DNA of 64,000 bases from Macrostomum hystrix (lineage: Eukaryota > Animalia > Platyhelminthes). Positions 34,446 to 64,000 of the stretch are shown here, in pieces. Each line of letters starts with the position of its first letter. Position 1 is the first letter of the stretch. Made by a program: the position numbers and the translations under genes. The notes under the pieces were generated by a model. That model saw only the letters and a list, made by a program, of their open reading frames with translations. It searched no databases and was not told the origin of the DNA. Location: positions 910,286 through 974,285 of the forward strand of contig CATNEN010000027.1 of NCBI GenBank assembly GCA_950097015.1, read 5' to 3'.

Positions 34446-36064
34446 TTAGGCAAATTATATCAAAAGAACTGCTTTGTATCTGCTTCCAATCAAAATCTGT
34501 CACCATTTAAATCAGAAAAATGGAAACTTTCCTGTCTGTAGTGCGTTTTTTCGCGAAAACCAGCCTTTAATTTTTTCTAAAAACGTATATAGTTCCCGTC
34601 CTTCTACTGCTTCACACTACGGGCTTGAGAGCTGCGGTCTAATGTAAAAAATATATTTTAGTAATGATCATAGCAATTATCCAGTAATTCTAGAATCTAA
34701 TTATATTTAGTTAGTAATTATATCATAGTAAAAAACGCGGCACAAAAAAGTTTTTGACTAAAAGGTTCAATATACTTTTGTAAACTTTTAGCTATCAAAG
34801 TAGAAAGTTCAGTCTTTGGCAATTTGCGACGTCTTACAATATTGCGCCGTTTAGCAGGGTTTATTTATAAGAAAAACAAAAGCAGCGTAATATTTTTTAA
34901 GATCAACATATACATCAACAAAGCTACCAAATTTCTTTTTATATATTTGCAAATCAAGAGTCCTTTAACTTAAAAAGCCTTATAATATTTTCTTTTAAAT
35001 GTTTTTTTTACTATTTTCCTAGTGCGTGCGTGCGTCACGAGGTCTCAAGTGTTAAGCGTCGAATTCACAATAGTGATTGTTGTTTCTAGTCAACTAGTTT
35101 CTAGTTGTTTCTAGTTTCTAGTCTAGAAACCGAAGATTAGAACGATGCATGACTGAATATGATTATTTGTTAGATCTTTTACATTAATTGCATTTCCTGC
35201 CTATTAATTGCATAGATAGTCTTATCTTGACTTCTATGTTTGACTTCTTTGACTCAAAGCACTTTGACTTTGACTTCGACGCTCGGACCCCTCGTTTCGG
35301 TTTTTTTCGGCGCTACGTTGACTGCCTGCTAAGCGACGCCGAAGGCCGTGGCGCCAGACACTGCCTACGGGGGGGAATTTGTTCGCACGCTGGCTCTGCG
35401 CTGCGCCATTTGACGCAACCTCCCTGACTTTTGGGGCATACGTCCTTTGTTGTTGTTGTTGACTCGTACTAAAGTTACAGTACTTGTAGAGCAAGTTTCC
35501 ATTATTATCGTTATTGATGAATGTGCAGCTAAGCATGCAGATGCAACTAAGAAAAAAAGGGCTGTAGCTAAGGTTGAAAGTGCAGCAGCTAAGGACGTCT
35601 ATACTTCCAGTACCAGAACCAGTACCAGAACCAGTACCAGAAAAAAATTATGTTATAGCCAACAAAAAATCGACAAGCAACTAATAAAAAGACTTCTAAC
35701 AGATGAAATACTTATATATCGGTCCGAAAATATCATTATTGAGAATAAAATTAATAAATATCGACGGACTTGCGCACAACACACAAAAAATGGTTTACTT
35801 TCACAAAACGTTTTTTAATATATTTTTTCATAGAATAAAACAAATTTGCTCAACCAACTGAGTAAACGAATACAAAAAGCGGTTTACTAAATATCGCAAC
35901 TACTAAAATCACAACTCAAAACTCACCTCATTAAATGTGTTTGTAAAATTTATTTTTTTTATAATCATCGTAAACTTCATCAAAAAAACTAAAAATATAA
36001 CCTCACTTTTGCGCTTCGCAGGATTATTACTCGTACATCATATACAGCTGAGAGCAATGATAAG

Positions 36065-45000: not shown

Positions 45001-48000
45001 CCATTTTAAAAGTACTTTTCGTCACCTCACTGAATCTGGTGGTCAAAAGAAGCTGAAAACTCAGATCTGGAAGGAAACATTATCTGTAAACACGGCTGTA
45101 AAATTTCAGAGCCCTGACTAGTCGCGTCTCGGAGTTGTAGACCCTCGAGTCCCCCCCACTCTTATATCTCCCATTTTAAAAGTACTTTTCGTCACCTCAC
45201 TGAATCTGGTGGTCAAAAGAAGCTGAAAACTCAGATCTGGAAGGAAACATTATCTGTGAACACGGCTGTAAAATTTCAGAGCCCTGACTAGTCGCGTCTC
45301 GGAGTTGTAGACCCTCGAGTCCCCCCCACTCTGATATCTCCCATTTTAAAAGTACTTTTCGTCACCTCACTGAATCTGGTGGTCAAAAGAAGCTGAAAAC
45401 TCAGATCTGGAAGGAAACATTATCTGTGAACACGGCTGTAAAATTTCAGAGCCCTGACTAGTCACGTCTCGGAGTTGTAGACCCTCGAGTCCCCCCCACT
45501 CTGATATCTCCCATTTTAAAAGTACTTTTCGTCACCTCACTGAATCTGGTGGTCAAAAGAAGCTGAAAACTCAGATCTGGAAGGAAACATTATCTGTAAA
45601 CACGGCTGTAAAATTTCAGAGCCCTGACTATTCGCGTCTCGGAGTTGTAGACCCTCGAGTCCCCCCCACTCTGATATCTCCCATTTTAAAAGTACTTTTC
45701 GTCACCTCACTGAATCTGGTGGTCAAAAGAAGCTGAAAACTCAGATCTGGAAGGAAACATTATCTGTAAACACGGCTGTAAAATTTCAGAGCCCTGACTA
45801 TTCGCGTCTCGGAGTTGTATACCCTCGAGTCCCCCCCACTCTGATATCTCCCATTTTAAAAGTACTTTTCGTCACCTCACTGAATCTGGTGGTCAAAAGA
45901 AGCTGAAAACTCAGATCTGGAAGGAAACATTATCTGTGAACACGGCTGTAAAATTTCAGAGCCCTGACTATTCGCGTCTCGGAGTTGTAGACCCTCGAGT
46001 CCCCCCCACTCTGATATCTCCCATTTTAAAAGTACTTTTCGTCACCTCACTGAATCTGGTGGTCAAAAGAAGCTGAAAACTCAGATCTGGAAGGAAACAT
46101 TATCTGTGAACACGGCTGTAAAATTTCAGAGCCCTGACTAGTCGCGTCTCGGAGTTGTAGACCCTCGAGTCCCCCCCACTCTGATATCTCCCATTTTAAA
46201 AGTACTTTTCGTCACCTCACTGAATCTGGTGGTCAGACGAGGCTAAAAACTCAGATCTGGAAGGAAACATTATCTGTAAACACGGCTGTAAAATTTCAGA
46301 GCCCTGACTATTCGCGTCTCGGAGTTGTAGACCCTCGAGTCCCCCCCACTCTGATATCTCCCATTTTAAAAGTACTTTTCGTCACCTCACTGAATCTGGT
46401 GGTCAGACGAGGCTAAAAACTTAGATCTGGAAGGAAACATTATCTGTAAACACGGCTGTAAAATTTCAGAGCCCTGACTATTCGCGTCTCGGAGTTGTAG
46501 ACCCTCGAGTCCCCCCCACTCTGATATCTCCCATTTTAAAAGTACTTTTCGTCACCTCACTGAATCTGGTGGTCAAAAGAAGCTGAAAACTCAGATCTGG
46601 AAGGAAACATTATCTGTAAACACGGCTGTAAAATTTCAGAGCCCTGACTATTCGCGTCTCGGAGTTGTAGACCCTCGAGTCCCCCCCACTCTGATATCTC
46701 CCATTTTAAAAGTACTTTTCGTCACCTCACTGAATCTGGTGGTCAAAAGAAGCTGAAAACTCAGATCTGGAAGGAAACATTATCTGTAAACACGGCTGTA
46801 AAATTTCAGAGCCCTGACTATTCGCGTCTCGGAGTTGTAGACCCTCGAGTCCCCCCCACTCTGATATCTCCCATTTTAAAAGTACTTTTCGTCACCTCAC
46901 TGAATCTGGTGGTCAAAAGAAGCTGAAAACTCAGATCTGGAAGGAAACATTATCTGTAAACACGGCTGTAAAATTTCAGAGCCCTGACTATTCGCGTCTC
47001 GGAGTTGTAGACCCTCGAGTCCCCCCCACTCTGATATCTCCCATTTTAAAAGTACTTTTCGTCACCTCACTGAATCTGGTGGTCAAAAGAAGCTGAAAAC
47101 TCAGATCTGGAAGGAAACATTATCTGTGAACACGGCTGTAAAATTTCAGAGCCCTGACTAGTCACGTCTCGGAGTTGTAGACCCTCGAGTCCCCCCACTC
47201 TGATATCTCCCATTTTAAAAGTACTTTTCGTCACCTCACTGAATCTGGTGGTCAGACGAGGCTAAAAACTCAGATCTGGAAGGAAACATTATCTGTAAAC
47301 ACGGCTGTAAAATTTCAGAGCCCTGACTATTCGCGTCTCGGAGTTGTAGACCCTCGAGTCCCCCCCACTCTGATATCTCCCATTTTAAAAGTACTTTTCG
47401 TCACCTCACTGAATCTGGTGGTCAAAAGAAGCTGAAAACTCAGATCTGGAAGGAAACATTATCTGTGAACACGGCTGTAAAATTTCAGAGCCCTGACTAG
47501 TCGCGTCTCGGAGTTGTAGACCCTCGAGTCCCCCCCACTCTGATATCTCCCATTTTAAAAGTACTTTTCGTCACCTCACTGAATCTGGTGGTCAGACGAG
47601 GCTAAAAACTTAGATCTGGAAGGAAACATTATCTGTAAACACGGCTGTAAAATTTCAGAGCCCTGACTATTCGCGTCTCGGAGTTGTAGACCCTCGAGTC
47701 CCCCCCACTCTGATATCTCCCATTTTAAAAGTACTTTTCGTCACCTCACTGAATCTGGTGGTCAAAAGAAGCTGAAAACTCAGATCTGGAAGGAAACATT
47801 ATCTGTAAACACGGCTGTAAAATTTCAGAGCCCTGACTATTCGCGTCTCGGAGTTGTAGACCCTCGAGTCCCCCCCACTCTGATATCTCCCATTTTAAAA
47901 GTACTTTTCGTCACCTCACTGAATCTGGTGGTCAAAAGAAGCTGAAAACTCAGATCTGGAAGGAAACATTATCTGTAAACACGGCTGTAAAATTTCAGAG

Positions 48001-51000
48001 CCCTGACTATTCGCGTCTCGGAGTTGTAGACCCTCGAGTCCCCCCCACTCTGATATCTCCCATTTTAAAAGTACTTTTCGTCACCTCACTGAATCTGGTG
48101 GTCAAAAGAAGCTGAAAACTCAGATCTGGAAGGAAACATTATCTGTGAACACGGCTGTAAAATTTCAGAGCCCTGACTAGTCGCGTCTCGGAGTTGTAGA
48201 CCCTCGAGTCCCCCCACTCTGATATCTCCCATTTTAAAAGTACTTTTCGTCACCTCACTGAATCTGGTGGTCAGACGAGGCTAAAAACTCAGATCTGGAA
48301 GGAAACATTATCTGTAAACACGGCTGTAAAATTTCAGAGCCCTGACTAGTCGCGTCTCGGAGTTGTAGACCCTCGAGTCCCCCCCACTCTGATATCTCCC
48401 ATTTTAAAAGTACTTTTCGTCACCTCACTGAATCTGGTGGTCAAAAGAAGCTGAAAACTCAGATCTGGAAGGAAACATTATCTGTGAACACGGCTGTAAA
48501 ATTTCAGAGCCCTGACTAGTCGCGTCTCGGAGTTGTAGACCCTCGAGTCCCCCCCACTCTGATATCTCCCATTTTAAAAGTACTTTTCGTCACCTCACTG
48601 AATCTGGTGGTCAAAAGAAGCTGAAAACTCAGATCTGGAAGGAAACATTATCTGTAAACACGGCTGTAAAATTTCAGAGCCCTGACTATTCGCGTCTCGG
48701 AGTTGTAGACCCTCGAGTCCCCCCCACTCTGATATCTCCCATTTTAAAAGTACTTTTCGTCACCTCACTGAATCTGGTGGTCAAAAGAAGCTGAAAACTC
48801 AGATCTGGAAGGAAACATTATCTGTAAACACGGCTGTAAAATTTCAGAGCCCTGACTATTCGCGTCTCGGAGTTGTAGACCCTCGAGTCCCCCCACTCTG
48901 ATATCTCCCATTTTAAAAGTACTTTTCGTCACCTCACTGAATCTGGTGGTCAGACGAGGCTAAAAACTCAGATCTGGAAGGAAACATTATCTGTAAACAC
49001 GGCTGTAAAATTTCAGAGCCCTGACTAGTCGCGTCTCGGAGTTGTAGACCCTCGAGTCCCCCCCACTCTGATATCTCCCATTTTAAAAGTACTTTTCGTC
49101 ACCTCACTGAATCTGGTGGTCAGACGAGGCTAAAAACTCAGATCTGGAAGGAAACATTATCTGTAAACACGGCTGTAAAATTTCAGAGCCCTGACTAGTC
49201 GCGTCTCGGAGTTGTAGACCCTCGAGTCCCCCCCACTCTGATATCTCCCATTTAAAAGTACTTTTCGTCACCTCACTGAATCTGGTGGTCAAAAGAAGCT
49301 GAAAACTCAGATCTGGAAGGAAACATTATCTGTGAACACGGCTGTAAAATTTCAGAGCCCTGACTAGTCGCGTCTCGGAGTTGTAGACCCTCGAGTCCCC
49401 CCCACTCTGATATCTCCCATTTTAAAAGTACTTTTCGTCACCTCACTGAATCTGGTGGTCAGACGAGGCTAAAAACTTAGATCTGGAAGGAAACATTATC
49501 TGTAAACACGGCTGTAAAATTTCAGAGCCCTGACTATTCGCGTCTCGGAGTTGTAGACCCTCGAGTCCCCCCCACTCTGATATCTCCAATTTTAAAAGTA
49601 CTTTTCGTCACCTCACTGAATCTGGTGGTCAAAAGAAGCTGAAAACTCAGATCTGGAAGGAAACATTATCTGTAAACACGGCTGTAAAATTTCAGAGCCC
49701 TGACTATTCGCGTCTCGGAGTTGTAGACCCTCGAGTCCCCCCCACTCTGATATCTCCCATTTTAAAAGTACTTTTCGTCACCTCACTGAATCTGGTGGTC
49801 AAAAGAAGCTGAAAACTCAGATCTGGAAGGAAACATTATCTGTAAACACGGCTGTAAAATTTCAGAGCCCTGACTATTCGCGTCTCGGAGTTGTAGACCC
49901 TCGAGTCCCCCCCACTCTGATATCTCCCATTTTAAAAGTACTTTTCGTCACCTCACTGAATCTGGTGGTCAAAAGAAGCTGAAAACTCAGATCTGGAAGG
50001 AAACATTATCTGTAAACACGGCTGTAAAATTTCAGAGCCCTGACTATTCGCGTCTCGGAGTTGTATACCCTCGAGTCCCCCCCACTCTGATATCTCCCAT
50101 TTTAAAAGTACTTTTCGTCACCTCACTGAATCTGGTGGTCAGACGAGGCTAAAAACTCAGATCTGGAAGGAAACATTATCTGTGAACACGGCTGTAAAAT
50201 TTCAGAGCCCTGACTAGTCGCGTCTCGGAGTTGTAGACCCTCGAGTCCCCCCCACTCTGATATCTCCCATTTTAAAAGTACTTTTCGTCACCTCACTGAA
50301 TCTGGTGGTCAGACGAGGCTAAAAACTTAGATCTGGAAGGAAACATTATCTGTAAACACGGCTGTAAAATTTCAGAGCCCTGACTATTCGCGTCTCGGAG
50401 TTGTAGACCCTCGAGTCCCCCCCACTCTGATATCTCCAATTTTAAAAGTACTTTTCGTCACCTCACTGAATCTGGTGGTCAAAAGAAGCTGAAAACTCAG
50501 ATCTGGAAGGAAACATTATCTGTAAACACGGCTGTAAAATTTCAGAGCCCTGACTATTCGCGTCTCGGAGTTGTAGACCCTCGAGTCCCCCCCACTCTGA
50601 TATCTCCCATTTTAAAAGTACTTTTCGTCACCTCACTGAATCTGGTGGTCAAAAGAAGCTGAAAACTCAGATCTGGAAGGAAACATTATCTGTAAACACG
50701 GCTGTAAAATTTCAGAGCCCTGACTATTCGCGTCTCGGAGTTGTAGACCCTCGAGTCCCCCCCACTCTGATATCTCCCATTTTAAAAGTACTTTTCGTCA
50801 CCTCACTGAATCTGGTGGTCAAAAGAAGCTGAAAACTCAGATCTGGAAGGAAACATTATCTGTAAACACGGCTGTAAAATTTCAGAGCCCTGACTAGTCG
50901 CGTCTCGGAGTTGTAGACCCTCGAGTCCCCCCCACTCTTATATCTCCCATTTTAAAAGTACTTTTCGTCACCTCACTGAATCTGGTGGTCAAAAGAAGCT

Positions 51001-52826
51001 GAAAACTCAGATCTGGAAGGAAACATTATCTGTGAACACGGCTGTAAAATTTCAGAGCCCTGACTAGTCGCGTCTCGGAGTTGTAGACCCTCGAGTCCCC
51101 CCCACTCTGATATCTCCCATTTTAAAAGTACTTTTCGTCACCTCACTGAATCTGGTGGTCAAAAGAAGCTGAAAACTCAGATCTGGAAGGAAACATTATC
51201 TGTGAACACGGCTGTAAAATTTCAGAGCCCTGACTAGTCGCGTCTCGGAGTTGTAGACCCTCGAGTCCCCCCACTCTGATATCTCCCATTTTAAAAGTAC
51301 TTTTCGTCACCTCACTGAATCTGGTGGTCAGACGAGGCTAAAAACTCAGATCTGGAAGGAAACATTATCTGTAAACACGGCTGTAAAATTTCAGAGCCCT
51401 GACTATTCGCGTCTCGGAGTTGTAGACCCTCGAGTCCCCCCCACTCTGATATCTCCCATTTTAAAAGTACTTTTCGTCACCTCACTGAATCTGGTGGTCA
51501 AAGAAGCTGAAAACTCAGATCTGGAAGGAAACATTATCTGTAAACACGGCTGTAAAATTTCAGAGCCCTGACTATTCGCGTCTCGGAGTTGTATACCCTC
51601 GAGTCCCCCCCACTCTGATATCTCCCATTTTAAAAGTACTTTTCGTCACCTCACTGAATCTGGTGGTCAAAAGAAGCTGAAAACTCAGATCTGGAAGGAA
51701 ACATTATCTGTGAACACGGCTGTAAAATTTCAGAGCCCTGACTATTCGCGTCTCGGAGTTGTAGACCCTCGAGTCCCCCCCACTCTGATATCTCCCATTT
51801 TAAAAGTACTTTTCGTCACCTCACTGAATCTGGTGGTCAAAAGAAGCTGAAAACTCAGATCTGGAAGGAAACATTATCTGTGAACACGGCTGTAAAATTT
51901 CAGAGCCCTGACTAGTCGCGTCTCGGAGTTGTAGACCCTCGAGTCCCCCCCACTCTGATATCTCCCATTTTAAAAGTACTTTTCGTCACCTCACTGAATC
52001 TGGTGGTCAGACGAGGCTAAAAACTCAGATCTGGAAGGAAACATTATCTGTAAACACGGCTGTAAAATTTCAGAGCCCTGACTATTCGCGTCTCGGAGTT
52101 GTAGACCCTCGAGTCCCCCCCACTCTGATATCTCCCATTTTAAAAGTACTTTTCGTCACCTCACTGAATCTGGTGGTCAGACGAGGCTAAAAACTCAGAT
52201 CTGGAAGGAAACATTATCTGTAAACACGGCTGTAAAATTTCAGAGCCCTGACTAGTCGCGTCTCGGAGTTGTAGACCCTCGAGTCCCCCCCACTCTGATA
52301 TCTCCCATTTTAAAAGTACTTTTCGTCACCTCACTGAATCTGGTGGTCAAAAGAAGCTGAAAACTCAGATCTGGAAGGAAACATTATCTGTGAACACGGC
52401 TGTAAAATTTCAGAGCCCTGACTAGTCGCGTCTCGGAGTTGTAGACCCTCGAGTCCCCCCCACTCTGATATCTCCCATTTTAAAAGTACTTTTCGTCACC
52501 TCACTGAATCTGGTGGTCAAAAGAAGCTGAAAACTCAGATCTGGAAGGAAACATTATCTGTGAACACGGCTGTAAAATTTCAGAGCCCTGACTAGTCACG
52601 TCTCGGAGTTGTAGACCCTCGAGTCCCCCCCACTCTGATATCTCCCATTTTAAAAGTACTTTCGTCACCTCACTGAATCTGGTGGTCAGACGAGGCTAAA
52701 AACTCAGATCTGGAAGGAAACATTATCTGTAAACACGGCTGTAAAATTTCAGAGCCCTGACTAGTCGCGTCTCGGAGTTGTAGACCCTCGAGTCCCCCCC
52801 ACTCTGATATTTCCCATTTTAAAAGT
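36065..52826 (+). repeat. 170-bp satellite array, about 98 copies (left arm)
   Basis: Period 170 (tctggaagga at 36401 and 36571); a few dimorphic sites (AAAGAAGCTG/GACGAGGCTA, TGTG/TGTA, CTAG/CTAT). Confidence 0.98.
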
Positions 52827-53394
52827 GGGCACAACACAACACCCTCACTCTGAGATGCCTGCGTATTTTTAGCGTTGAGTTGCGCAACATGTAGGGATGT
52901 AATGCGCAATTGGTAATACAGGGTAATATTTTTGCCTTGTCGTGCACATGGGTCTCAATTTTTGCATGTTGGATCTGATTTTTGCTATTTGTTTTTTTAT
53001 TATTTGAAGTACTAATGCCCTCTTATGTTTGTCGGCTTTTGAGGCTTTAGCGTTTGAAGTTGAGTGTTGAGATTTCAAGCCTCGTGTTTTATAGTCTTCG
53101 CATTATTAAAAGCCTTCGTATTTTATAGTGACGATTGCGTATCCTCTATTGCATTTAGTTCTTAGTGCTTTGTCCTTACGTTTTATCGCTAATGCCTGAC
53201 AAAATAAGTGTTCTGGGGTGTGTACCGTGCTCTGTTTTACACTAGTAGCTGGAATATCCAATCAGCTGCTTTATCTGCTTCTTGCTTGCTATCTCATATC
53301 CCTATCCGAACAACCCATGCATAAATTTTCGAGTATAAAGCCTTGAGGAAAGCAGATTTCAATCGTCTGCTAGTATATTCATATATTTTTAACC

Positions 53395-56300
53395 ATGATT
53401 TTCAGTCTTCGCATCATTGCTTTACTTTCAATTTTCTTTATTTCCAAAGCAACCCACAATCGACGCATTTCTTTTTTTGAACTGTCGCCTGAATATTTTG
53501 AAGACTATAGTGATGAGTGCCTTGGCAAATCATTTCGCTGTCCCTATGGTGCTTGCGGGCAAATTCTGAGCAAGCTTTCAGCAAAGAACACTATTGAAAA
53601 CCGTCGAGTTGTCTGGCTTTATTATCAGCGTAAAATTGTCGGTAAGTCAAAATCTTCTGTTTCGAAAAGAAAGAAAACTGCTAATCATAAATCTGCTGTG
53701 GTAAGATCCACTCGAGTTGCTGTTGCTGCTTCTGTTGTGCCTGGCCGTGGTGCTGTTGCTGCTTCTGTTGTGCCTGCTCGTCGTGCTGTTGCTGCTTCTG
53801 TTGTGCCTGCCCGGGGTGCTGTTGCTGCTTCTGTTGTGCCTGCTCGTCGTGCTGTTGCTGCTTCTGTTGTGCCTGCCCGGGGTGCTGTTGCTGCTTCTGT
53901 TGTGCCTGCCCGGGTGCTGTTGCTGCTTCTGTTGTGCCTGCTCGTCGTGCTGTTGCTGCTTCTGTTGTGCCTGCCCGGGGTGCTGTTGCTGCTTCTGTTT
54001 TGCCTGCTCGTCGTGCTGTTGCTGCTTCTGTTGTGCCTGCTCGTCGTGCTGTTGCTGCTTCTGTTGTGCCTGCCCGTCGTGCTGTTGCTGCTTCTGTTGT
54101 GCCTGCCCGGGGTGCTGTTGCTGCTTCTGTTGTGCCTGCTCGTCGTGCTGTTGCTGCTTCTGTTGTGCCTGCCCGGGGTGCTGTTGCTGCTTCTGTTGTG
54201 CCTGCTCGTCGTGCTGTTGCTGCTTCTGTTGTGCCTGCCCGGGGTGCTGTTGCTGCTTCTGTTGTGCCTGCTCGTCGTGCTGTTGCTGCTTCTGTTGTGC
54301 CTGCTCGTCGTGCTGTTGCTGCTTCTGTTGAGCCTGCCCGTCGTGCTGTTGCTGCTTCTGTTGTGCCTGCCCGGGGTGCTGTTGCTGCTTCTGTTGTGCC
54401 TGCTCGTCGTGCTGTTGCTGCTTCTGTTGTGCCTGCCCGGGGTGCTGTTGCTGCTTCTGTTGTGCCTGCTCGTCGTGCTGTTGCTGCTTCTGTTGTGCCT
54501 GCCCGGGGTGCTGTTGCTGCTTCTGTTGTGCCTGCTCGTCGTGCTGTTGCTGCCTCTGTTGTGCCTGCCCGGGGTGCTGTTGCTGCTTCTGTTGTGCCTG
54601 CTCGTCGTGCTGTTGCTGCTTCTGTTGTGCCTGCCCGGGGTGCTGTTGCTGCTTCTGTTGTGCCTGCCCGTGGTGCTGTTGCTGCTTCTGTTGTGCCTGC
54701 CCGTGGTGCTGTTGCTGCTTCTGTTGTGCCTGCCCGTCGTGCTGTTGCTGCTTATGTGGGGCCTGCTCATGGAAGTAATGACGCTTGTGGTGATGATATG
54801 AGTGATTCTAGGAGTGGTGATGCTGGGAGTGATGATGCTGGGAGTGAGGATGCTGGGAGTGATGATGGTTGGAGTGATGATGCTGGGAGTGAGGATGCTG
54901 GGAGTGATGATGCTGGGAGTGAGGATGCTGGGAGTGATGATGCTGGGAGTGAGGATGCTGGGAGTGATGATGGTTGGAGTGATGATGCTGGGAGTGATGA
55001 TTCAGAAGTAAGGGACTGTACTAATGCTGAAGTTGCTGTTGATTTCGAGAGTGGTGCAAGCGGATCAATAACTAATTTAGTTTTTCATTTTCGAATAGCT
55101 TGGAGCCAGTGGAAAAATAACTTTTTTATCAGGCGGGGAGAAAAAATGCATTCGATATGTCAGAGAACCGCTTTTTGGTGGCTAAACTGCATTCGTGAAA
55201 ATTATCGACAATATTGCTCTTCGAATGTGGAAGCAAGTAACTGTGTTCTTAAATTTAAGAATCGATATCTGAACTTTCCAAATCTCAGAGCACAAAAGCC
55301 AAAATATTTCGTAAAACAGGTCGCATTATGCCAGCATCCCGCATGCAAAATAGTACACGATTTTAGAATTATAGATTTTCCAACTGAAAATGAGCCTGTG
55401 GTGGTAGTTGTTAATTCTAAAGGTGAGAAGAATCATAATCATCCAACGATGTCTAGAATGACGCCATTAGAATCAGAAAGGATAGCAAAACTACTTGAAA
55501 CTGAAGCACCAACTGATGTACATGATAGACTACTCTCGGAAATGACAGATAAAGAGATAAAGGAAAATGACTTTTCTCGATCAAAAAATTTGGATGCCAT
55601 TCGGCGGGTAAACGCGAAGCGGTTGGTTGCCGCAGAAGAACGGCTGCATAAAAATGTTGAAGTCGAAATTGCTGCTTTGCAACGAATACTGAGCGAAACA
55701 GACACAGAGAGTAAGAGTATACGCGGATACATTCAAGCTGTGTCTCGCCATCCATTTCATGTACATCTGTACCTCGAAAGACAGCTTAGACTTGTTACAA
55801 GTAGGCCGCAGTGTGTTTTACATCTAGATGCCACTGGAAGCATTTTCAAGAGAATGAAATTTCGCAGGTAGCCAAATATTTCTTACTCGCTGACAATGCC
55901 TCCGATAACGGTCAGACGCGTGGTGTGCCTAGTGGCCGAAATGATAACAAGTGAGCATAGGACCAAATCAATCCAACACTTTTTGTTTTCTGTCGCGCAG
56001 ATTTGGGCCACAACTAGCAAGCAGTACTATTATGTCGCATGACTATTTACCCGCTGTCAATCGTCACGGACTTCTCTTGGCATTGTTACATTCGTATGCC
56101 AGTCAATTTGGCACCCAGCTTAGAGCAATACCTTATTGATACGCATTGTGCGTTACGCATGGGGAAACAAATCAAGTACACGATTCCATTCATTTGCACA
56201 AATCACGTAATCCGTGCGTTCATTAATGGCATACAACTAAAGTCTAAAACTGCGAAGGCTAAAGCTATGCGGGGAATTATTTATTAGCGCATTTGTCTTT

Positions 56301-57819
56301 TTATTACATCAGGAGATTTTGAAGCGTTTGAAACTACCTTGAGTCTCACTGTAGATACATTTTTAGGGCAGCGAGATCCGAAAGAATTAAGATCAGCGAT
56401 TAACAATTGGGAAACTGAGCCCGTGGACGAAGAATATTCGCTCTACAACGACGATGAAATAATAACGATAAGGAAGAGCAGGCCGAAAGTTCTCGATTTG
56501 TTCTCTGCGCAAGGCTCTCCGTACATTTTTCTTTTCAAGTCCCGACAGGCAAGTATTGATGCAACCGACGAGCCAGCCGGGCCAATTTAAAAGCTATACT
56601 CACCAAAACTGCTGGTTTACTTGCTGAAGCACTGGTGTAGTTTAGGCTCCATTGTTTCTGCCATTTCATCGGGAGTATCAAGAGCTTCAGAAAGAATAAA
56701 GGTTGGTTTTCAAACTCTTACGTAGAATCGTTACTTTTCAGACGTTAAATCTCGAAAAACAAGGTTCGGCAAGGCTTCCAGGGTGAACGTGTCGAGTTTT
56801 ATTTGCGGACGGTTAAAATATTTAAAAACAAGATTAACAGCTTTCGACATAATCAACAAAGTAGGGAAAGCAACGTTATCTGGAAGGAGAGAAAGCACGA
56901 AGATATTTCCTTTTCTCGCGAGGAGTGGCGAAGGGCCGAGCGGGTTAGTCGTTCAAAGTACAAGCGACAGAGAACAGAATCAGCGACAAAGAATAGAAAG
57001 CAGCAAGGCACAGCAGAACGGGAACCAGGTGTGGTGCACCCGCGCTGGAGACTTCCTAACTGAGGTTTGATAGAGAATCATTGGAACCCGGAAAGTGGCT
57101 TTCTGTCGGAATAGTAATTCATTCATACATCTACTTTGCGTATGCAACCCAAGCAGCAAAGCGGGCCACCTACCATCCAGCTTCTTTACTGCATTCGCAA
57201 GGAGATTCGAGCGCTGCGATTGACATGCTAAGAGCGACAGTTTCAAACAAATGCACCCGTTTAATCTGTCCGATTCTTCAGAACGACCACTTCTACTTAG
57301 TCTATATTGACACAACACGCAAAGAACTAGCTGTCCTAGACACAAAAACCTATCTCAGATAAGTCGATACCAAAACATTTTATAAAAACTATGGCAAAAC
57401 CTAATCAAAAGCACCACCAGTATTCGCGAAGACATGCCAGAAATTTTAGGTACGTATAAAAAATAAATCAATGTTGAGATCATTGCAGTTTGATGGTCAT
57501 AGCTGGGGGTATTTGTCTGTCTGTACGCGAAAGTTCTAGTAACATCCGTGATAGAGTTCCGAGCTTTGTGCTTTCCAACAACGGAGGGATTTCTTAACAG
57601 AGCTCGAATGCATCTGGAAAGACTTGGAAAGAGAAAATGAAGAATCCACCAACTCGTGCGTTCGCTGTCATGAAGCTGAACCCAGTGCGACTGGAACTTG
57701 GCTGCAATGTGATCTTTGTGATTCATGGCTGCACCATGAGTGGCATCGAAAGATATGCACCAGCGCCACGCGCCAACGGCTACGTCTGCTGCTGTGCCGA
57801 GTACGCAGCAACGCGATAG
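53395..57819 (+). CDS. MULE/NOF-like DDE transposase fused to a Ulp1 (C48) protease and a PHD finger; about 1470 aa if about a dozen small indels are corrected
   Basis: WRKY/GCM1-type Zn finger CQHPAC...NHNH; D1 LHLDATGS (55827); YSL..VAEMITSEH..I..FL; D2 IVTDFSW/ALL (56069); CxxH ICTNH (56195); E in SNSYVES.FSDVK (56725); Ulp1 HFYLVYID (57288), VLD (57339), QFDGHS[C]GVFV (57486); PHD (57657-57800). AATAAA at 57891. Confidence 0.8.
53715..54752 (+). repeat. 33-bp coding minisatellite (AVAASVVPARR/G), about 31 copies, within the transposase N-terminus
   Basis: GCTGTTGCTGCTTCTGTTGTGCCTGCTCGTCGT repeated; one G missing at about 53913 shifts the frame. Confidence 0.95.
54790..55000 (+). repeat. 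15-bp coding repeat (DDAGS/EDAGS/DDGWS), acidic tract in the transposase
   Basis: GATGATGCTGGGAGT repeated in frame. Confidence 0.9.
57090..57560 (+). other. Ulp1/SENP-like peptidase C48 domain (frameshifted)
   Basis: WLS...I..Y start; ICPILQNDHFYLVYIDTTRKELAVLD; QFDGHS-C-GVFVCLYAK is restored by inserting a single T at 57506. Confidence 0.75.
57654..57819 (+). other. PHD finger (C4HC3-like), one extra G
   Basis: CVRC...WLQCDLCDSWLHHE[C]IERYAPAPRANGYVCCC; removing one G at about 57742 joins the two ORF-track frames. Confidence 0.75.
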
Positions 57820-58277: not shown

Positions 58278-61200
58278 TTTTCAGCTTCTTTTGACCACCA
58301 GATTCAGTGAGGTGACGAAAAGTACTTTTAAAATGGGAGATATCAGAGTGGGGGGGACTCGAGGGTCTACAACTCCGAGACGCGAATAGTCAGGGCTCTG
58401 AAATTTTACAGCCGTGTTTACAGATAATGTTTCCTTCCAGATCTGAGTTTTCAGCTTCTTTTGACCACCAGATTCAGTGAGGTGACGAAAAGTACTTTTA
58501 AATGGGAGATATCAGAGTGGGGGGGACTCGAGGGTCTACAACTCCGAGACGCGAATAGTCAGGGCTCTGAATTTTACAGCCGTGTTTACAGATAATGTTT
58601 CCTTCCAGATCTGAGTTTTCAGCTTTTCTTTGACCACCAGATTCAGTGAGGTGACGAAAAGTACTTTTAAAATGGGAGATATCAGAGTGGGGGGGACTCG
58701 AGGGTCTACAACTCCGAGACGCGACTAGTCAGGGCTCTGAAATTTACAGCCGTGTTCACAGATAATGTTTCCTTCCAGATCTGAGTTTTCAGCTTCGTTT
58801 GACCACCAGATTCAGTGAGGTGACGAAAAGTACTTTTAAAATGGGAGATATCAGAGTGGGGGGGACTCGAGGGTCTACAACTCCGAGACGCGACTAGTCA
58901 GGGCTCTGAAATTTTACAGCCGTGTTACAGATAATGTTTCCTTCCAGATCTGAGTTTTTCAGCCTCGTCTGACCACCAGATTCAGTGAGGTGACGAAAAG
59001 TACTTTTAAAATGGGAGATATCAGAGGGGGGACTCGAGGGTCTACAACTCCGAGACGCGACTAGTCAGGGCTCTGAAATTTTACAGCCGTGTTCACAGAT
59101 AATGTTTCCTTCCAGATCTGAGTTTTCAGCTTCTTTTGACCACCAGATTCAGTGAGGTGACGAAAAGTACTTTTAAAATGGGAGATATCAGAGTGGGGGG
59201 GACTCGAGGGTCTACAACTCCGAGACGCGAATAGTCAGGGCTCTGAAATTTTACAGCCGTGTTCACAGATAATGTTTCCTTCCAGATCTGAGTTTTCAGC
59301 TTCTTTTGACCACCAGATTCAGTGAGGTGACGAAAAGTACTTTTAAAATGGGAGATATCAGAGTGGGGGGACTCGAGGGTCTACAACTCCGAGACGCGAC
59401 TAGTCAGGGCTCTGAAATTTTACAGCCGTGTTCACAGATAATGTTTCCTTCCAGATCTGAGTTTTCAGCTTCTTTGACCACCAGATTCAGTGAGGTGACG
59501 AAAAGTACTTTTAAAATGGGAGATATCAGAGTGGGGGGGACTCGAGGGTCTACAACTCCGAGACGCGAATAGTCAGGGCTCTGAAATTTTACAGCCGTGT
59601 TCACAGATAATGTTTCCTTCCAGATCTGAGTTTTTAGCCTCGTTGACCACCAGATTCAGTGAGGTGACGAAAAGTACTTTTAAAATGGGAGATATCAGAG
59701 TGGGGGGGACTCGAGGGTCTACAACTCCGAGACGCGACTAGTCAGGGCTCTGAAATTTTACAGCCGTGTTCACAGATAATGTTTCCTTCCAGATCTGAGT
59801 TTTCAGCTTCTTTTGACCACCAGATTCAGTGAGGTGACGAAAAGTACTTTTAAAATGGGAGATATCAGAGTGGGGGGGACTCGAGGGTCTACAACTCCGA
59901 GACGCGACTAGTCAGGGCTCTGAAATTTTACAGCCGTGTTCACAGATAATGTTTCCTTCCAGATCTGAGTTTTCAGCTTCTTTTGACCACCAGATTCAGT
60001 GAGGTGACGAAAAGTACTTTTAAAATGGGAGATATCAGAGTGGGGGGGACTCGAGGGTCTACAACTCCGAGACGCGACTAGTCAGGGCTCTGAAATTTAC
60101 AGCCGTGTTTACAGATAATGTTTCCTTCCAGATCTGAGTTTTCTTTCAGCTTCTTTTGACCACCAGATTCAGTGAGGTGACGAAAAGTACTTTTAAAATG
60201 GGAGATATCAGAGTGGGGGGGACTCGAGGGTCTACAACTCCGAGACGCGAATAGTCAGGGCTCTGAAATTTTACAGCCGTGTTTACAGATAATGTTTCCT
60301 TCCAGATCTGAGTTTTCAGCCTCTTTTGACCACCAGATTCAGTGAGGTGACGAAAAGTACTTTTAAAATGGGAGATATCAGAGTGGGGGGGACTCGAGGG
60401 TCTACAACTCCGAGACGCGAATAGTCAGGGCTCTGAAATTTACAGCCGTGTTTACAGATAATGTTTCCTTCCAGATCTGAGTTTTCAGCTTCTTTTGACC
60501 ACCAGATTCAGTGAGGTGACGAAAAGTACTTTTAAAATGGGAGATATCAGAGTGGGGGGGACTCGAGGGTCTACAACTCCGAGACGCGAATAGTCAGGGC
60601 TCTGAAATTTTACAGCCGTGTTACAGATAATGTTTCCTTCCAGATCTGAGTTTTCAGCCTCTTTGACCACCAGATTCAGTGAGGTGACGAAAAGTACTTT
60701 TAAAATGGGAGATATCAGAGTGGGGGGGACTCGAGGGTCTACAACTCCGAGACGCGACTAGTCAGGGCTCTGAAATTTTACAGCCGTGTTCACAGATAAT
60801 GTTTCCTTCCAGATCTGAGTTTTCAGCTTCGTCTGACCACCAGATTCAGTGAGGTGACGAAAAGTACTTTTAAAATGGGAGATATCAGAGTGGGGGGACT
60901 CGAGGGTCTACAACTCCGAGACGCGACTAGTCAGGGCTCTGAAATTTACAGCCGTGTTTACAGATAATGTTTCCTTCCAGATCTGAGTTTTCAGCTTCTT
61001 TTGACCACCAGATTCAGTGAGGTGACGAAAAGTACTTTTAAAATGGGAGATATCAGAGTGGGGGGGACTCGAGGGTCTACAACTCCGAGACGCGAATAGT
61101 CAGGGCTCTGAAATTTACAGCCCGTGTTTACAGATAATCATTCCAGATCTGAGTTTTCAGCTTCTTTTGACCACCAGATTCAGTGAGGTGACGAAAAGTA

Positions 61201-64000
61201 CTTTTAAAATGGGAGATATCAGAGTTGGGGGGGACTCGAGGGTCTACAACTCCGAGACGCGAATAGTCAGGGCTCTGAAATTTTACAAGCGTGTTTACAG
61301 ATAATGTTTCCTTCAGATCTGAGTTTTAGCTTCTTTTGACCACCAGATTCAGTGAGGTGAGCGAAAGTACTTTTAAAATGGGAGATATCAGAGTGGGGGG
61401 GACTCGAGGGGTCTACAACTCCGAGACGCGAATTAGTCAGGGCTCTGAAATTTTACAGCCGTGTTTACAGATAATGTTTCCCTTCCAGATCTGAGTTTTC
61501 AGCTTCTTTTGACCACCAGATTCAGTGAGGTGACGAAAATTACTTTTAAAATGGGAGATATCAGAGTGGGGGGGACTCGAGGGTCTACAACTCCGAGACG
61601 CGACTAGTCAGGTCTCTGAAATTTTACAGCCTGTTCACAGATAATGTTTCCTTCCAGATCTGATTTTTCAGCTTCTTTTTGACCACCAATTCAGTGAGGT
61701 GACGAAAAAGTACTTTTAAAATGGGAGATATCAGAGTGGGGGGGACTCGAGGTCTACAACTCCGAGACGCGACTAGTCAGGGCTCTGAAATTTTACAGCC
61801 GTGTTTACAGATAATGTTTCCTTCCAGATCTGAGTTTTTAGCCTCGTCCTGACCACCAGATTCAGTGAGGTGACGAAAGTACTTTTAAAATGGGAGATAT
61901 CAGAGTGGGGGGGACTCGAGGGGTCTACAACTCCGAGACGCGACTAATCAGGGCTCTGAAATTTTACAGCCGTGTTCACAGATAATGTTTCCTTCCAGAT
62001 CTGAGTTTTCAGCTTCTTTTTGACACCCAGATTCAGTGAGGTGACGGAAAAAGTACTTTTAAAATGGGAGATATCAGAGTGGGGGGGACTCGAGGGTCTA
62101 CAACTCCGAGACGCGATAGTCAGGGTCTGAAATTTACAGCCGTGTTTACAGATAATGTTTCCTTCCAGATCTTGAGTTTTCAGCTTCTTTTGACCACCAG
62201 ATTCAGTGAGGTGACGAAAAGTACTTTTAAAATGGGAGATATCAGAGTGGGGGGGACTCGAGGGTCTACAACTCCGAGACGCGAATAGTCAGGGCTCTGA
62301 AATTTTACAGCCGTGTTTACAGATAATGTTTCCTTCCAGATCTGAGTTTTCAGCTTCTTTTGACCACCAGATTCAGTGAGGTGACGAAAGTACTTTTAAA
62401 ATGGGAGATATCAGAGTGGGGGGACTCGAGGGTCTACAACTCCGAGACGCGAATAGTCAGGGCTCTGAAATTTTACAGCCGTGTTTACAGATAATGTTTC
62501 CTTCCAGATCTGAGTTTTCAGCTTCTTTTGACCACCAGATTCAGTGAGGTGACGAAAAGTACTTTTAAAAGGGGAGATATCAGAGTGGGGGGGACTCGAG
62601 GGTCTACAACTCCGAGACGCGACTAGTCAGGGCTCTGAAATTTTACAGCCGTGTTCACAGATAATGTTTCCTTCCAGATCTGAGTTTTCAGCTTCTTTGA
62701 CCAACAGATTCAGTGAGGTGACGAAAAAGTACTTTTAAATGGGAGATATCAGAGTGGGGGGGACTCGAGGGTCTACAACTCCGAGGACGCGACTAGTCAG
62801 GCTCTGAAATTTTACAGCCGTGTTTACAGATAATGTTTCCTTCCAGATCTGAGTTTTTAGCTCGTTGACCACCAGATTCAGTGAGGTGACGAAAGTACTT
62901 TTAAAATGGGAGATATCAGAGTGGGGGGACTCGAGGGTCTACAACTCCGAGACGCGACTAGTCAGGGCTCTGAAATTTTACAGCCGTGTTCACCAGATAA
63001 TGTTTCCTTCCAGATCTGAGTTTTCAGCTTCTTTTGACCACCAGATTCAGTGAGGTGACGAAAAGTACTTTTAAAATGGGAGATATCAGAGTGGGGGGGA
63101 CTTCGAGGGTCTACAACTCCGAGACGCGACTAGTCAGGGCTCTGAAATTTACAGCCGTGTTCACAGATAATGTTTCCTTCCAGATCTGAGTTTTCTAGCC
63201 TCGTCTGACCACCAGATTCAGTGAGTGACGAAAAGTACTTTTAAAATGGGAGATATCAGAGTGGGGGGGACTCGAGGGTCTACAACTCGAGACGCGACTA
63301 GTCAGGGCTCTGAAATTTTACAGCCGTGTTTCACAGATAATGTTTCCTTCCAGATCTGAGTTTTTCAGCTTCTTTTGACCACCAGATTCAGTGAGGTGAC
63401 GAAAAGTACTTTTAAAATGGGAGATATCAGAGTGGGGGGGACTCGAGGGTCTACAACTCCGAGACGCGACTAGTCAGGGCTCTGAAATTTTACAGCCGTG
63501 TTCACAGATAATGTTTCCTTCCAGATCTGAGTTTTCAGCCTCGTCTGACCACCAGATTCAGTGAGGTGACGAAAAGTACTTTTAAAATGGGAGATATCAG
63601 AGTGGGGGGACTCGAGGGTCTACAACTCCGAGACGCGACTAGTCAGGGGCTCTGAAATTTTACAGCCGTGTTCACAGATAATGTTTCCTTCCAGATCTGA
63701 GTTTCCAGCTTCTTTTGACCACCAGATTCAGTGAGGTGACGAAAAGTACTTTTAAAATGGGAGATATCAGAGTGGGGGGGGACTCGAGGGTCTACAAACT
63801 CCGAGACGCGAATAGTCAGGGCTCTGAAATTTTACAGCCGGTTTACAGATAATGTTTCCTTCCAGATCTGAGTTTTCAGCTTCTTTTGACCACCAGATTC
63901 AGTGAGGTGACGAAAAGTACTTTTAAATGGGAGATATCAGAGTGGGGGGGACTCGAGGGTCTACAACTCCGAGACGCGAATAGTCAGGGCTCTGAAATTT
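58278..64000 (-). repeat. 170-bp satellite array, inverted (right arm), at least 33 copies, truncated by the window end
   Basis: Reverse complement of the left-arm unit (TTCAGCTTCTTTTGACCACCAGATTCAGTGAGG...); many 1-nt indels. Confidence 0.97.

What the first reader, a model, noticed from the sequence alone, without database searches (positions are those of the whole stretch)
55300..57819. Transposase carries its own SUMO/ubiquitin-like protease and a histone-reader PHD finger
Behind the D-D-CxxH-E core, the reconstructed frame gives a Ulp1/C48 His-Asp-Cys triad with the oxyanion Gln, then a PHD finger. SUMOylation is central to piRNA- and H3K9me-guided TE silencing in animals (established). 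A PHD-targeted deSUMOylase fused to the transposase could be an anti-silencing module that lets the element act within the heterochromatin its own satellite arms attract (inference). Ulp1 fusions are reported for Rehavkus-type MULEs, so the fusion is not new, but to my knowledge its function is untested.
Basis: partly seen in the sequence, partly recalled or inferred. Interest (0 to 1): 0.75.

Follow-up and report, generated by a model that had tools for sequence, protein, structure and literature searches.

The report
Foldback/NOF-type transposase with protease and PHD
This is a copy of a known kind of animal jumping gene (Foldback/NOF or "Rehavkus" type) whose transposase ends in a Ulp1-like cysteine protease and a PHD finger, and the domain layout is real but already known, its function is untested, and the broken reading frame looks mostly like assembly error.

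Summary
The described features are present. Window 55224-57819 (+) holds a transposase with D, D, CxxH and E motifs, then four Ulp1/C48 signature motifs in the right order, then a PHD-like Cys/His pattern. It lies between inverted 170-bp satellite arrays.

The frame has to be pieced together from all three frames. In the assembled sequence the catalytic Cys and one PHD Cys are Trp codons (TGG).

Short-read contigs from four public runs agree with each other against the window at 39-54 one-base indels per ~3 kb. They imply TGT (Cys) at both codons, so most breaks are probably assembly errors.

Pfam gives no Peptidase_C48 hit on the window pieces or on relatives. The window PHD scores below threshold (E 0.004).

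An intact 1009-aa relative carries transposase, protease and PHD in one ORF. Its C-terminal model matches SENP5 and Ulp1 (Z 12-13.8) and the BPTF and PHF2 PHD fingers. Its nearest Atlas cluster is the "120.7 kDa protein in NOF-FB transposable element", which is annotated with C48 and PHD.

The architecture is therefore a new member of a known kind. Nothing here tests the anti-silencing idea. In the relatives the PHD resembles H3K4me3 readers, which argues against heterochromatin targeting.

The parts
36064..52826 (-). Left arm: 170-bp satellite array (98.7 copies), inverted relative to the right arm
   Evidence: Tandem Repeats Finder. Reverse-complement BLAST match to 58262-58700 at 95-97% identity.
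53718..55001 (+). Internal 33-bp minisatellite (53718-54766) and 15-bp repeat (54803-55001). The 15-bp repeat encodes an acidic Gly/Ser/Asp repeat in frame 0, upstream of the transposase homology.
   Evidence: Loose ends of contigs at 54908-54931 show that copies differ here.
55224..55988 (+). Transposase N-terminal Cys/His-rich region and the first catalytic Asp (LDATG, D at 55827-55829), frame 0. It contains an apparent in-frame stop at 55869-55871.
   Evidence: hmmsearch with the profile of P0002-P0015, E 2.6e-28. P0002 found with E 1.8e-12.
56045..56236 (+). Second catalytic Asp (VTDFS, D at 56069-56071) and CxxH (CTNH, 56195-56206), frame 2
   Evidence: hmmsearch E 5e-4. E improves to 9e-6 and the hit extends to 55922-56324 after the listed read-supported deletions are applied.
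56713..56824 (+). Catalytic Glu motif NSYVES (frame 1) running on into YFSDVKSRK... (frame 2). The join falls exactly at 56731.
   Evidence: All four runs leave out one base at 56731. The relatives read NAAVESHFKTVK here.
56941..57006 (+). Basic linker (Lys/Arg-rich), a possible nuclear localisation signal
   Evidence: Frame 1 translation. Weak colinear hit to the family profile. The function is inferred.
57081..57625 (+). Ulp1/C48-like protease region: LEPGKWLSV (57081), His 57288-57290, Asp 57339-57341 (H+17), Gln 57486-57488, Cys position 57504-57506 (TGG in the assembly), active-site helix GVFVCLYAKVL (57506-57538, frame 2), C-terminal FLNRARMHLERL (57590-57625)
   Evidence: Motif scan against shuffles. 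In the ESM Atlas feature search of 57060-57359, 22 of 30 hits are Peptidase_C48 clusters, score 0.91. Reads show 57490 T>C, and 57506/57508 G>T. No Pfam, phmmer or hhalign support.
57657..57819 (+). PHD-like finger: C-x2-C-x13-C-x2-C-x4-H-x2-(W in the assembly, Cys in X4's contig), then ...NGYVCCC in frame 1, with the stop TAG at 57817-57819
   Evidence: Pfam PHD E 0.0042, 17.5 bits, below the 24-bit cut-off. PDB 1we9 PHD E 0.007. hhalign to the relatives' PHD E 0.011. X4 loose end at 57742.
58278..64000 (+). Right arm: the same 170-bp satellite in the opposite orientation. It runs off the window.
   Evidence: GC skew mirrors the left arm.

Best explanation
Identity. The core 52827-58277, between two inverted arrays of one 170-bp satellite, is the coding part of a foldback-type DNA transposon. 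It belongs to the NOF / Rehavkus branch of the Mutator-like (MULE) superfamily. One gene (about 55.0-57.82 kb, + strand) encodes, in order:
- a Cys/His-rich N-terminal region;
- an RNase-H-like D-D-CxxH-E transposase;
- a basic linker;
- a clan-CE, Ulp1/SENP-like cysteine protease;
- a PHD finger.
This matches the layout of the Atlas cluster named '120.7 kDa protein in NOF-FB transposable element' (1022 aa, annotated with Peptidase_C48 and PHD).

State of the frame. The frame looks shattered mainly because this stretch of the assembly carries about one single-base indel per 60-70 bases relative to short-read contigs. The underlying element probably has an open frame with the catalytic Cys and all PHD ligands.

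Mechanism (inferred, not shown). The PHD finger tethers the transposase to histone H3 tails. The protease removes SUMO or another ubiquitin-like modifier from proteins at the transposition site. The PHD kin are H3K4me3 readers, so I favour action at open or active chromatin over heterochromatin. My rough odds:
- deconjugation from host chromatin, repair or silencing factors: about 40%;
- deconjugation from the transposase itself: about 25%;
- self-processing of the fusion protein: about 15%;
- no enzymatic role: about 20%.
For: Family membership:
- The window transposase matches the P0002-P0015 profile (E 2.6e-28 and 5e-4, colinear).
- P0002's Atlas model matches the NOF-FB cluster best (TM 0.63 over 455 residues). 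The next matches are MULE/SWIM/FAR1 clusters.

Architecture in kin:
- P0005 (1009 aa, one ORF in L004) carries transposase, protease and PHD.
- Its C-terminal AlphaFold model (pLDDT 68, pTM 0.66) matches SENP5 at Z 13.8, SENP3 at 13.2, SENP1 at 12.1, Ulp1 at 12.0 and NEDP1 at 11.8. The top 28 rows are all clan CE. The PHD part matches BPTF at Z 6.5.
- The same model matches the NOF-FB cluster at TM 0.71 over residues 9-255.
- His, Asp, Gln and Cys are the same residue in every one of five relatives that are 34-42% identical to P0005.
- PHD passes the Pfam cut-off in a relative (30.1 bits).

The window itself:
- Four C48 motifs, each unique in the window, lie in the right order.
- Spacing is H+17=D and Q+6=Cys position, as I recall for Ulp1 and SENP1.
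- The Atlas feature search points to Peptidase_C48.

Assembly error:
- Four runs share 39-54 one-base gaps against 19-41 substitutions.
- The deletion at 56731 joins NSYVES to YFSDVK exactly as in the relatives.
- The deletion at 55857 takes the frame off the TAG at 55869.
- X4 reads GAGTGTGCA at 57738, which gives H-H-E-C.
- The mismatch at 57508 (plus-strand contigs X1, X2, X4) and at 57506 (minus-strand contig X3) are the two equivalent alignments of one sequence. That sequence reads Ser-Cys-Gly-Val-Phe-Val-Cys.

Arms: foldback and Rehavkus elements carry tandem repeats in long inverted termini (10.1101/2024.12.02.626372; PMC6446971; 10.64898/2026.09.13.751287).
Against: - No Pfam Peptidase_C48 or MULE match on any window piece or on any relative.
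- phmmer of the 100-aa protease piece against 1.84 billion representatives gave only a spurious hit.
- hhalign and a frameshift-tolerant alignment found no similarity between the window's protease region and that of the P0005 family.
- The clan-CE fold is therefore shown for relatives, not for the window.
- My motif patterns were written after seeing the sequence.
- The insertions that I infer at 57505-57508 are not among the rows the reads tool printed (59 indels were not shown).
- The contigs could come from other copies, so this particular copy might really be broken.
- The outer ends of the element and its target-site duplication are not in the window.
- No RNA run holds the stretch.
- Every functional statement is inference.
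Confidence: 0.75

Rival explanations
1. The PHD finger guides a deSUMOylase into the heterochromatin that forms on the element's own satellite arms, where it strips SUMO from piRNA/H3K9me silencing factors so that the element can act there.
For: A clan-CE Ulp1-like domain and a PHD finger are fused to the transposase in kin. The element is embedded in more than 22 kb of its own satellite. The catalytic residues are the same in all five diverged relatives, so the protease is probably used.
Against: There is no test of substrate, target or silencing. The nearest PHD fingers are H3K4me3 readers, not H3K9me readers. Clan-CE matches at similar Z include NEDD8 proteases and deubiquitinases. The relatives examined show no comparable satellite arms in the DNA held: no tandem repeats in L001, no long inverted repeats in L004 or L011, and only two-copy repeats in L004. 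So the module is not tied to satellite arms.
Confidence: 0.1
2. This copy is a dead pseudogene. The frameshifts, the stop at 55869 and the Cys-to-Trp changes are real mutations of this locus, and the short-read contigs come from other, healthier copies.
For: The assembled sequence needs at least 8 frame changes. Contigs show presence, not absence, and none is identical to the window over the core. The core k-mer share is only 0.49-0.58 in the best runs.
Against: The window differs from all four runs by about twice as many one-base indels as substitutions. 11 of the 12 listed indels sit in runs of two or more identical bases. Indels come in compensating pairs, because contig lengths differ from the window span by only +5 to +16. 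Substitutions cluster within 3-5 bases (56255/57/59, 56585/88). This pattern fits consensus error in a long-read assembly better than decay, where substitutions dominate.
Confidence: 0.2
3. The C-terminal protease is a processing enzyme, as in adenovirus, poxvirus I7 and ASFV pS273R, which are also clan CE. It would cut the fusion protein to release the transposase or the PHD module, rather than removing SUMO or ubiquitin from host proteins.
For: Adenain, I7L and pS273R appear among the structural matches at Z 10.3-11.4. In several relatives the module is a separate downstream ORF or exon (L001, L011, L016), which shows that the two parts can work as separate chains.
Against: SENP and Ulp matches rank first. 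The window's active-site motif (Q-x-D-G-x-S-C-G-V-F-V-C-x-Y-A) resembles the SENP/Ulp1 signature. I looked for no Gly-Gly-type cleavage site.
Confidence: 0.12
4. The 'protease' in the window is a chance set of motifs, and only the transposase and a decayed PHD are real.
For: No profile or pairwise method recognises the region. The single-sequence AlphaFold model is unusable.
Against: Four signature motifs, each unique in 64 kb, lie in the right order and spacing exactly between the transposase and the PHD, where kin have a clan-CE domain. The Atlas features point to Peptidase_C48 in all ten best named hits. The reads restore the Cys and join it in frame to a canonical active-site helix.
Confidence: 0.05

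Closest known systems
FB-NOF (Foldback) element of Drosophila melanogaster and its 120.7-kDa NOF protein (RepeatMasker class DNA/MULE-NOF)
   Same: Long inverted arms built of a satellite-like tandem repeat around a coding core (10.64898/2026.09.13.751287). The protein is about 1000 aa with transposase, Peptidase_C48 and PHD, as the Atlas cluster is annotated. That cluster is the best structural match both to the relatives' transposase and to their C-terminal module.
   Different: The link to the window is indirect: window to P0002 family by sequence, then P0002/P0005 to the NOF cluster by predicted structure. No NOF sequence was available to align. The arms here are far longer (at least 16.8 kb and at least 5.7 kb) with a 170-bp unit. 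The host is another animal, which I could not identify.
Rehavkus elements (Repbase; treated as MULE or as its outgroup)
   Same: PHD finger in the transposase, minisatellite or tandem repeats in long inverted termini, animal hosts (PMC6446971 Table 1; 10.1101/2024.12.02.626372). In Tribolium the arm repeats can expand into arrays of up to 80 kb.
   Different: The papers I could read do not mention a Ulp1 domain for Rehavkus. No Repbase sequence was available to compare. The 9-bp target-site duplication could not be checked. That Rehavkus equals MULE-NOF is my recollection, not tested.
Ulp1(+PHD) C-terminal domains of Ginger1 and animal or plant Mutator transposases (Bao, Kapitonov & Jurka 2010, PMC2836005; KAONASHI MULEs, Hoen et al. 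2006, cited there)
   Same: A cut-and-paste transposase carrying a C-terminal Ulp1-type protease, in Ginger1-9_HM together with a PHD finger. The function is untested there too, and a role in the ubiquitin/SUMO-dependent repair response was proposed.
   Different: Ginger1 has a retroviral-integrase-type DDE, not a MULE-type D-D-CxxH-E. Those Ulp1 domains are recognised by pfam02902, whereas the domains here and in the P0005 family are not.
SENP/Ulp1 SUMO proteases (MEROPS C48, clan CE)
   Same: Fold (Z 12-13.8 for the relative), order His-Asp-Gln-Cys, H+17=D and Q+6=C spacing, and the Q-x-[ND]-G-x-[DS]-C-G active-site motif in the window.
   Different: No Pfam PF02902 match. The substrate is unknown. 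The relative's domain is compact, about 165 residues aligned.

Membership tests
NOF / Rehavkus (MULE-NOF) foldback transposons | Transposase homologous to the NOF/Rehavkus transposase with a D-D-CxxH-E core | tested here: met
   The test is indirect. Window against the P0002-P0015 profile gives E 2.6e-28 and 5e-4. P0002's best structural match is the NOF-FB cluster, TM 0.63 over 455 residues, followed by MULE clusters. The motifs are located.
NOF / Rehavkus (MULE-NOF) foldback transposons | Long inverted termini containing tandem repeats | tested here: inconclusive
   Inverted 170-bp arrays flank the core. The right arm runs off the window and the true termini were not seen, so the arms are not proven to belong to the element.
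NOF / Rehavkus (MULE-NOF) foldback transposons | 9-bp target-site duplication | not testable with these tools
   The right end lies beyond position 64000.
NOF / Rehavkus (MULE-NOF) foldback transposons | PHD finger in the transposase | tested here: inconclusive
   In the window, Pfam PHD scores 17.5 bits against a cut-off of 24, with 6 of 8 ligands in the assembled frame. X4's contig restores the sixth ligand. Relatives pass the cut-off: 30.1 bits and E 4e-9 to PHF2.
Canonical MULE (Pfam PF10551) | Match to the MULE transposase profile | tested here: not met
   No PF10551 hit in the window pieces or in 9 relatives at E up to 0.1-1. Only structural and feature-level neighbours are MULE clusters.
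Peptidase C48 (Ulp1/SENP) | Match to the Pfam PF02902 profile | tested here: not met
   No hit for window pieces or for P0005, L001, L006, L011 or L016 modules. Window pieces are short and frame-corrupted.
Peptidase C48 (Ulp1/SENP) | Clan-CE fold | tested here: inconclusive
   Met for the relative P0005 (SENP5 Z 13.8, rmsd 3.0, 160 aligned; Ulp1 Z 12.0). Not obtained for the window, because the single-sequence model had pLDDT 50.
Peptidase C48 (Ulp1/SENP) | Catalytic His, Asp, oxyanion Gln and Cys in that order with canonical spacing | tested here: inconclusive
   His 57288, Asp 57339 (+17) and Gln 57486 are present. The Cys position 57504-57506 is TGG in the assembly. The reads imply TGT followed in frame by GVFVC. 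The inserted base is inferred because it was not among the printed rows.
Peptidase C48 (Ulp1/SENP) | SUMO (or Ubl) isopeptidase or processing activity | not testable with these tools
   A biochemical assay is needed.
PHD finger, H3K4me3-reader class | Aromatic cage residues around the methyl-lysine pocket | not tested
   The only evidence is by-eye alignment to PHF2 and BPTF. Relatives keep Tyr/His, Met and Trp at three of four cage positions. The window has Trp at two positions. Cage positions are from memory.

The most novel reading that the evidence does not exclude
NOF/Rehavkus transposases use their PHD finger to dock on a specific histone mark, and their Ulp1-like domain to strip SUMO (or another Ubl) from chromatin-bound silencing or repair factors at that site. 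On this reading the C-terminal module is a transposon-encoded counter-defence or repair-steering device. It would be conserved from flies to the animals sampled here. In this genome it would be coupled to an element that seeds tens of kilobases of satellite DNA.
Probability: 0.12. Interest if true: 0.75.

Novelty: new member of a known kind. Interest (0 to 1): 0.3.

Why it matters
The value here is clarification rather than discovery.
- It shows that a shattered-looking gene in a satellite-rich part of this assembly is very likely an intact-type foldback transposon gene blurred by indel errors. Readers of this genome should not trust frames, or single Cys/Trp codons, in such regions.
- It links a small set of unannotated metagenome and genome proteins (P0002-P0015, no Pfam hits) to the NOF/Foldback transposase. 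It also shows by structure that their C-terminal module is a clan-CE protease plus a PHD finger that Pfam's C48 model misses.
- The open question stands: why do several unrelated transposase lineages (Ginger1, MULE, NOF) carry Ulp1 or OTU proteases? This family, with catalytic residues unchanged across diverged kin, is a reasonable test case. The question is not new, and this locus adds no functional evidence.

Tried and rejected
- **Pfam on ten stop-free pieces.** Only a sub-threshold PHD hit.
- **Word search with the 246-aa N-terminal piece.** No hits, because full-length kin fall outside its length band. Re-running with the 645-aa open stretch and region 400-645 found P0002.
- **phmmer of the 100-aa protease piece against 1.84 billion representatives.** One hit, a bacterial Golvesin repeat protein. 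It is spurious.
- **PDB phmmer on pieces.** Nothing for the protease.
- **hhalign of the window piece against the relatives' module.** Nothing.
- **My own frameshift-tolerant alignment of 57000-57620 to the relatives' protease profile.** Score 26.6 against 24.1 +/- 3.4 for shuffles, so not significant.
- **AlphaFold of the window piece without an alignment.** pLDDT 50, unusable, so I did not search with it.
- **Intron hypothesis for the stop at 55869 and for 57450-57488.** I rejected it. The read-through aligns with relatives across 55869, the second would remove the oxyanion Gln, and the reads explain the breaks as indels.
- **Applying only the 12 printed deletions and 10 shared substitutions in a script.** The second transposase hit lengthened (E 5e-4 to 9e-6). 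The total score barely changed (92.5 to 93.6; random deletions gave 82.6 +/- 3.3, max 96). The compensating insertions were not printed, so this is not decisive.
- **Alignment-based metagenome scan.** It failed for lack of conserved columns. The single-protein scan gave four close copies only.
- **Spliced model.** The two exon-like ORFs of L001/L002 were searched and aligned separately.

Full report
**1. What is at the coordinates**

The window is almost entirely tandem arrays. Between 36064-52826 and 58278-64000 lies one 170-bp satellite in opposite orientations. The evidence is a reverse-complement match at 95-97% and mirrored GC skew. These arrays enclose a 5.45-kb unique core, which has no second copy in the window.

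On the + strand of the core no frame is open for long. The coding signal hops between all three frames and crosses an apparent TAG at 55869.

**2. The transposase**

The 645-aa open stretch 53934-55868, searched over residues 400-645, found one relative, P0002 (643 aa, E 1.8e-12). P0002 in turn found 13 kin from metagenome, Logan and NCBI assemblies.

A profile of these 14 proteins hits the window in colinear order:
- Frame 0, 55224-55988, E 2.6e-28. This covers a Cys/His-rich N-terminal region and LDATG, with the first Asp at 55827-55829.
- Frame 2, 56045-56236, E 5e-4. This covers VTDFS, with the second Asp at 56069-56071, and CTNH at 56195-56206.

The Glu motif NSYVES is at 56713-56730 in frame 1. 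It runs on as YFSDVKSRK from 56732 in frame 2. The relatives read NAAVESHFKTVK at this point.

No member of the family, and no window piece, matches Pfam MULE. P0002's Atlas model nevertheless lies nearest to the cluster named "120.7 kDa protein in NOF-FB transposable element" (1022 aa; TM 0.63 over 455 residues). MULE/SWIM/FAR1 clusters follow. Its feature neighbours are MULE clusters.

**3. The C-terminal module in relatives**

P0005 (1009 aa) is a single ORF in contig L004. After the transposase it has a roughly 140-residue stretch with His, Asp, Gln and Cys in clan-CE order, then a Cys/His finger.

The same module follows the transposase as downstream ORFs or exons on the same strand in L001/L002, L006, L011-L013 and L016.

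In the alignment A2 (34-42% identity to P0005) the four catalytic residues are the same in every sequence. Pfam recognises the PHD finger (best 30.1 bits, 5 of 6 members) but never Peptidase_C48.

I ran AlphaFold on P0005:740-1009 with A2 (pLDDT 68, pTM 0.66). The matches were:

| Search | Match | Score |
|---|---|---|
| VIA-align, PDB | SENP5 | Z 13.8, rmsd 3.0, 160 aligned |
| VIA-align, PDB | RickCE | Z 13.2 |
| VIA-align, PDB | SENP3 | Z 13.2 |
| VIA-align, PDB | SENP1 | Z 12.1 |
| VIA-align, PDB | Ulp1 | Z 12.0 |
| VIA-align, PDB | NEDP1 | Z 11.8 |
| VIA-align, PDB | BPTF PHD | Z 6.5 |
| VIA-align, PDB | PHF2 PHD | Z 5.4 |
| Foldseek, PDB | SseL, SENP5, Ulp1 | E 2e-4 to 9e-4 |
| ESM Atlas | NOF-FB cluster (Peptidase_C48 45%, PHD 34% of members) | TM 0.71 over residues 9-255 |

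The top 28 VIA-align rows are all clan CE. The architecture transposase + Ulp1-like protease + PHD is therefore real in this family. It is the layout the Atlas annotates for the Drosophila Foldback/NOF protein cluster.

**4. The C-terminal module in the window**

Sequence methods fail here:
- No Pfam C48.
- No true phmmer hit among 1.84 billion representatives.
- Nothing by hhalign, or by a frameshift-tolerant alignment to the relatives' module.
- An unusable single-sequence model.

What does speak for a C48 domain:
- **Motifs.** Four signature patterns each occur once in the six-frame translation of all 64 kb. They lie on the + strand, in canonical order, within 460 bases: LEPGKWLSV (57081), HFYLVYID...LAVLDT (57288-57344, Asp at His+17), QFDGHSWG (57486, the Cys position at Gln+6) and GVFVCLYA (57506). 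Each is expected 0-0.01 times per shuffled core. The patterns were written after seeing the sequence, so the numbers are indicative only.
- **Atlas features.** The feature search of 57060-57359 gives Peptidase_C48 clusters for 22 of 30 hits, best score 0.91. This is a lead, not proof.
- **Position.** The region sits exactly where kin have the clan-CE domain.

The PHD region 57657-57743 reads C-x2-C-x13-C-x2-C-x4-H-x2-W in frame 0. It scores Pfam E 0.0042 (below cut-off), 1we9 E 0.007 and hhalign E 0.011. It ends in frame 1 with NGYVCCC and a TAG at 57817-57819.

**5. Why the frame is broken**

Logan contigs of four runs lie on 54929-58056 (2.7-3.1 kb each; two organism labels, one study). They show 39-54 one-base gaps but only 19-41 substitutions.

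- The printed indels are shared by all runs that cover them.
- 11 of the 12 printed indels sit in runs of two or more identical bases.
- Contig length exceeds the window span by only 5-16 bases, so insertions and deletions nearly cancel.
- Several substitutions cluster within 3-5 bases.

That is the signature of consensus error in a long-read assembly of a repeat-rich region, not of decay.

Specific cases:
- Dropping base 56731 (all four runs) joins NSYVES to YFSDVK, as in the relatives.
- Dropping 55857 moves the frame off the TAG at 55869.
- X4's contig ends with the letters TGCATCGAAAGAT after 57742. It therefore reads GAG-TGT-GCA, which makes the sixth PHD ligand Cys.
- At the catalytic codon, the three plus-strand contigs show G>T at 57508 and the minus-strand contig shows G>T at 57506. 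These are the two equally good alignments of one sequence with an extra T. That sequence reads Ser-Cys-Gly-Val-Phe-Val-Cys and joins the frame-0 Gln motif to the frame-2 active-site helix.
- All four runs also read T>C at 57490, which gives Gln-Ser-Asp-Gly.

The extra T at the catalytic codon is my inference, because 59 indels were not printed. Applying only the printed changes improves the second transposase hit (E 5e-4 to 9e-6) but not the total score. I cannot exclude that this very copy is truly damaged and the contigs come from other copies.

**6. What it is and how it probably works**

This is the coding core of a foldback-type transposon of the NOF/Rehavkus branch of the MULE superfamily.
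- Rehavkus elements are described with a PHD finger and minisatellites (PMC6446971).
- They are also described as foldback elements whose inverted termini carry tandem repeats. Those repeats can grow into arrays of up to 80 kb (10.1101/2024.12.02.626372).
- NOF_FB has a satellite-like repeat in its long terminal inverted repeats (10.64898/2026.09.13.751287).
- Most foldback elements are placed in Mutator (PMC4079207).

Ulp1 domains, in one case with a PHD finger, on Ginger1 and Mutator transposases of hydra, lancelet and plants were reported in 2010. The authors suggested a role in ubiquitin/SUMO-controlled repair (PMC2836005).

Function is inferred only. The relatives' PHD profile matches H3K4me3 readers best (PHF2 4e-9, BPTF, Spp1, PHF8, DIDO1, ING, TAF3). 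The fold cannot tell SUMO from NEDD8 or ubiquitin.

**7. Verdict**

Its functional part is untested and somewhat disfavoured. This is a new member of a known kind, of modest interest.

Noticed in passing
window 54900-58300: The assembly differs from four mutually consistent short-read contig sets by about one single-base indel per 60-70 bases, often in compensating pairs. Reading frames, and even single codons (two TGG where the reads imply TGT), cannot be trusted in this satellite-rich part of the genome.
   Followed up: partly
window 1-36000: At least 14 unrelated tandem arrays (periods 10 to 193 bp, up to 5 kb each) follow one another with little unique DNA between them. The region looks like a repeat graveyard or pericentromeric block.
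   Followed up: no
window 53395-55001: A 33-bp minisatellite (31.8 copies) is open in several frames on both strands, and a 15-bp repeat gives an acidic Gly/Ser/Asp repeat just upstream of the transposase homology. Contigs from other samples diverge here (loose ends at 54908-54931), so the N-terminus is length-variable. Whether the repeats are translated is unknown.
   Followed up: no
L011:3516-4124 and L012:1574-2182: In one group of relatives a 202-aa ORF with a Macro domain (PF01661) lies about 1 kb upstream of the transposase on the same strand. An unannotated 268-aa ORF lies between the transposase and the protease-PHD ORF. These may be further passenger genes of the element.
   Followed up: no
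L006:55-167 and 14734-14846: The 14.8-kb contig that carries relative P0011 plus a protease-PHD ORF ends in perfectly complementary 113-nt inverted repeats. These could be terminal inverted repeats of a whole element or an assembly fold-back.
   Followed up: no
runs X1-X5: The core occurs in runs labelled with two different organisms in one study, and a small share of its words occurs in an outdoor metagenome. It may be shared between close species, or the samples may be mixed.
   Followed up: no
P0002-P0015: Fourteen public proteins of this transposase family carry no Pfam annotation at all. The family is invisible to PF10551 (MULE) and PF02902 (Peptidase_C48), although structure places it with both.
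   Followed up: partly
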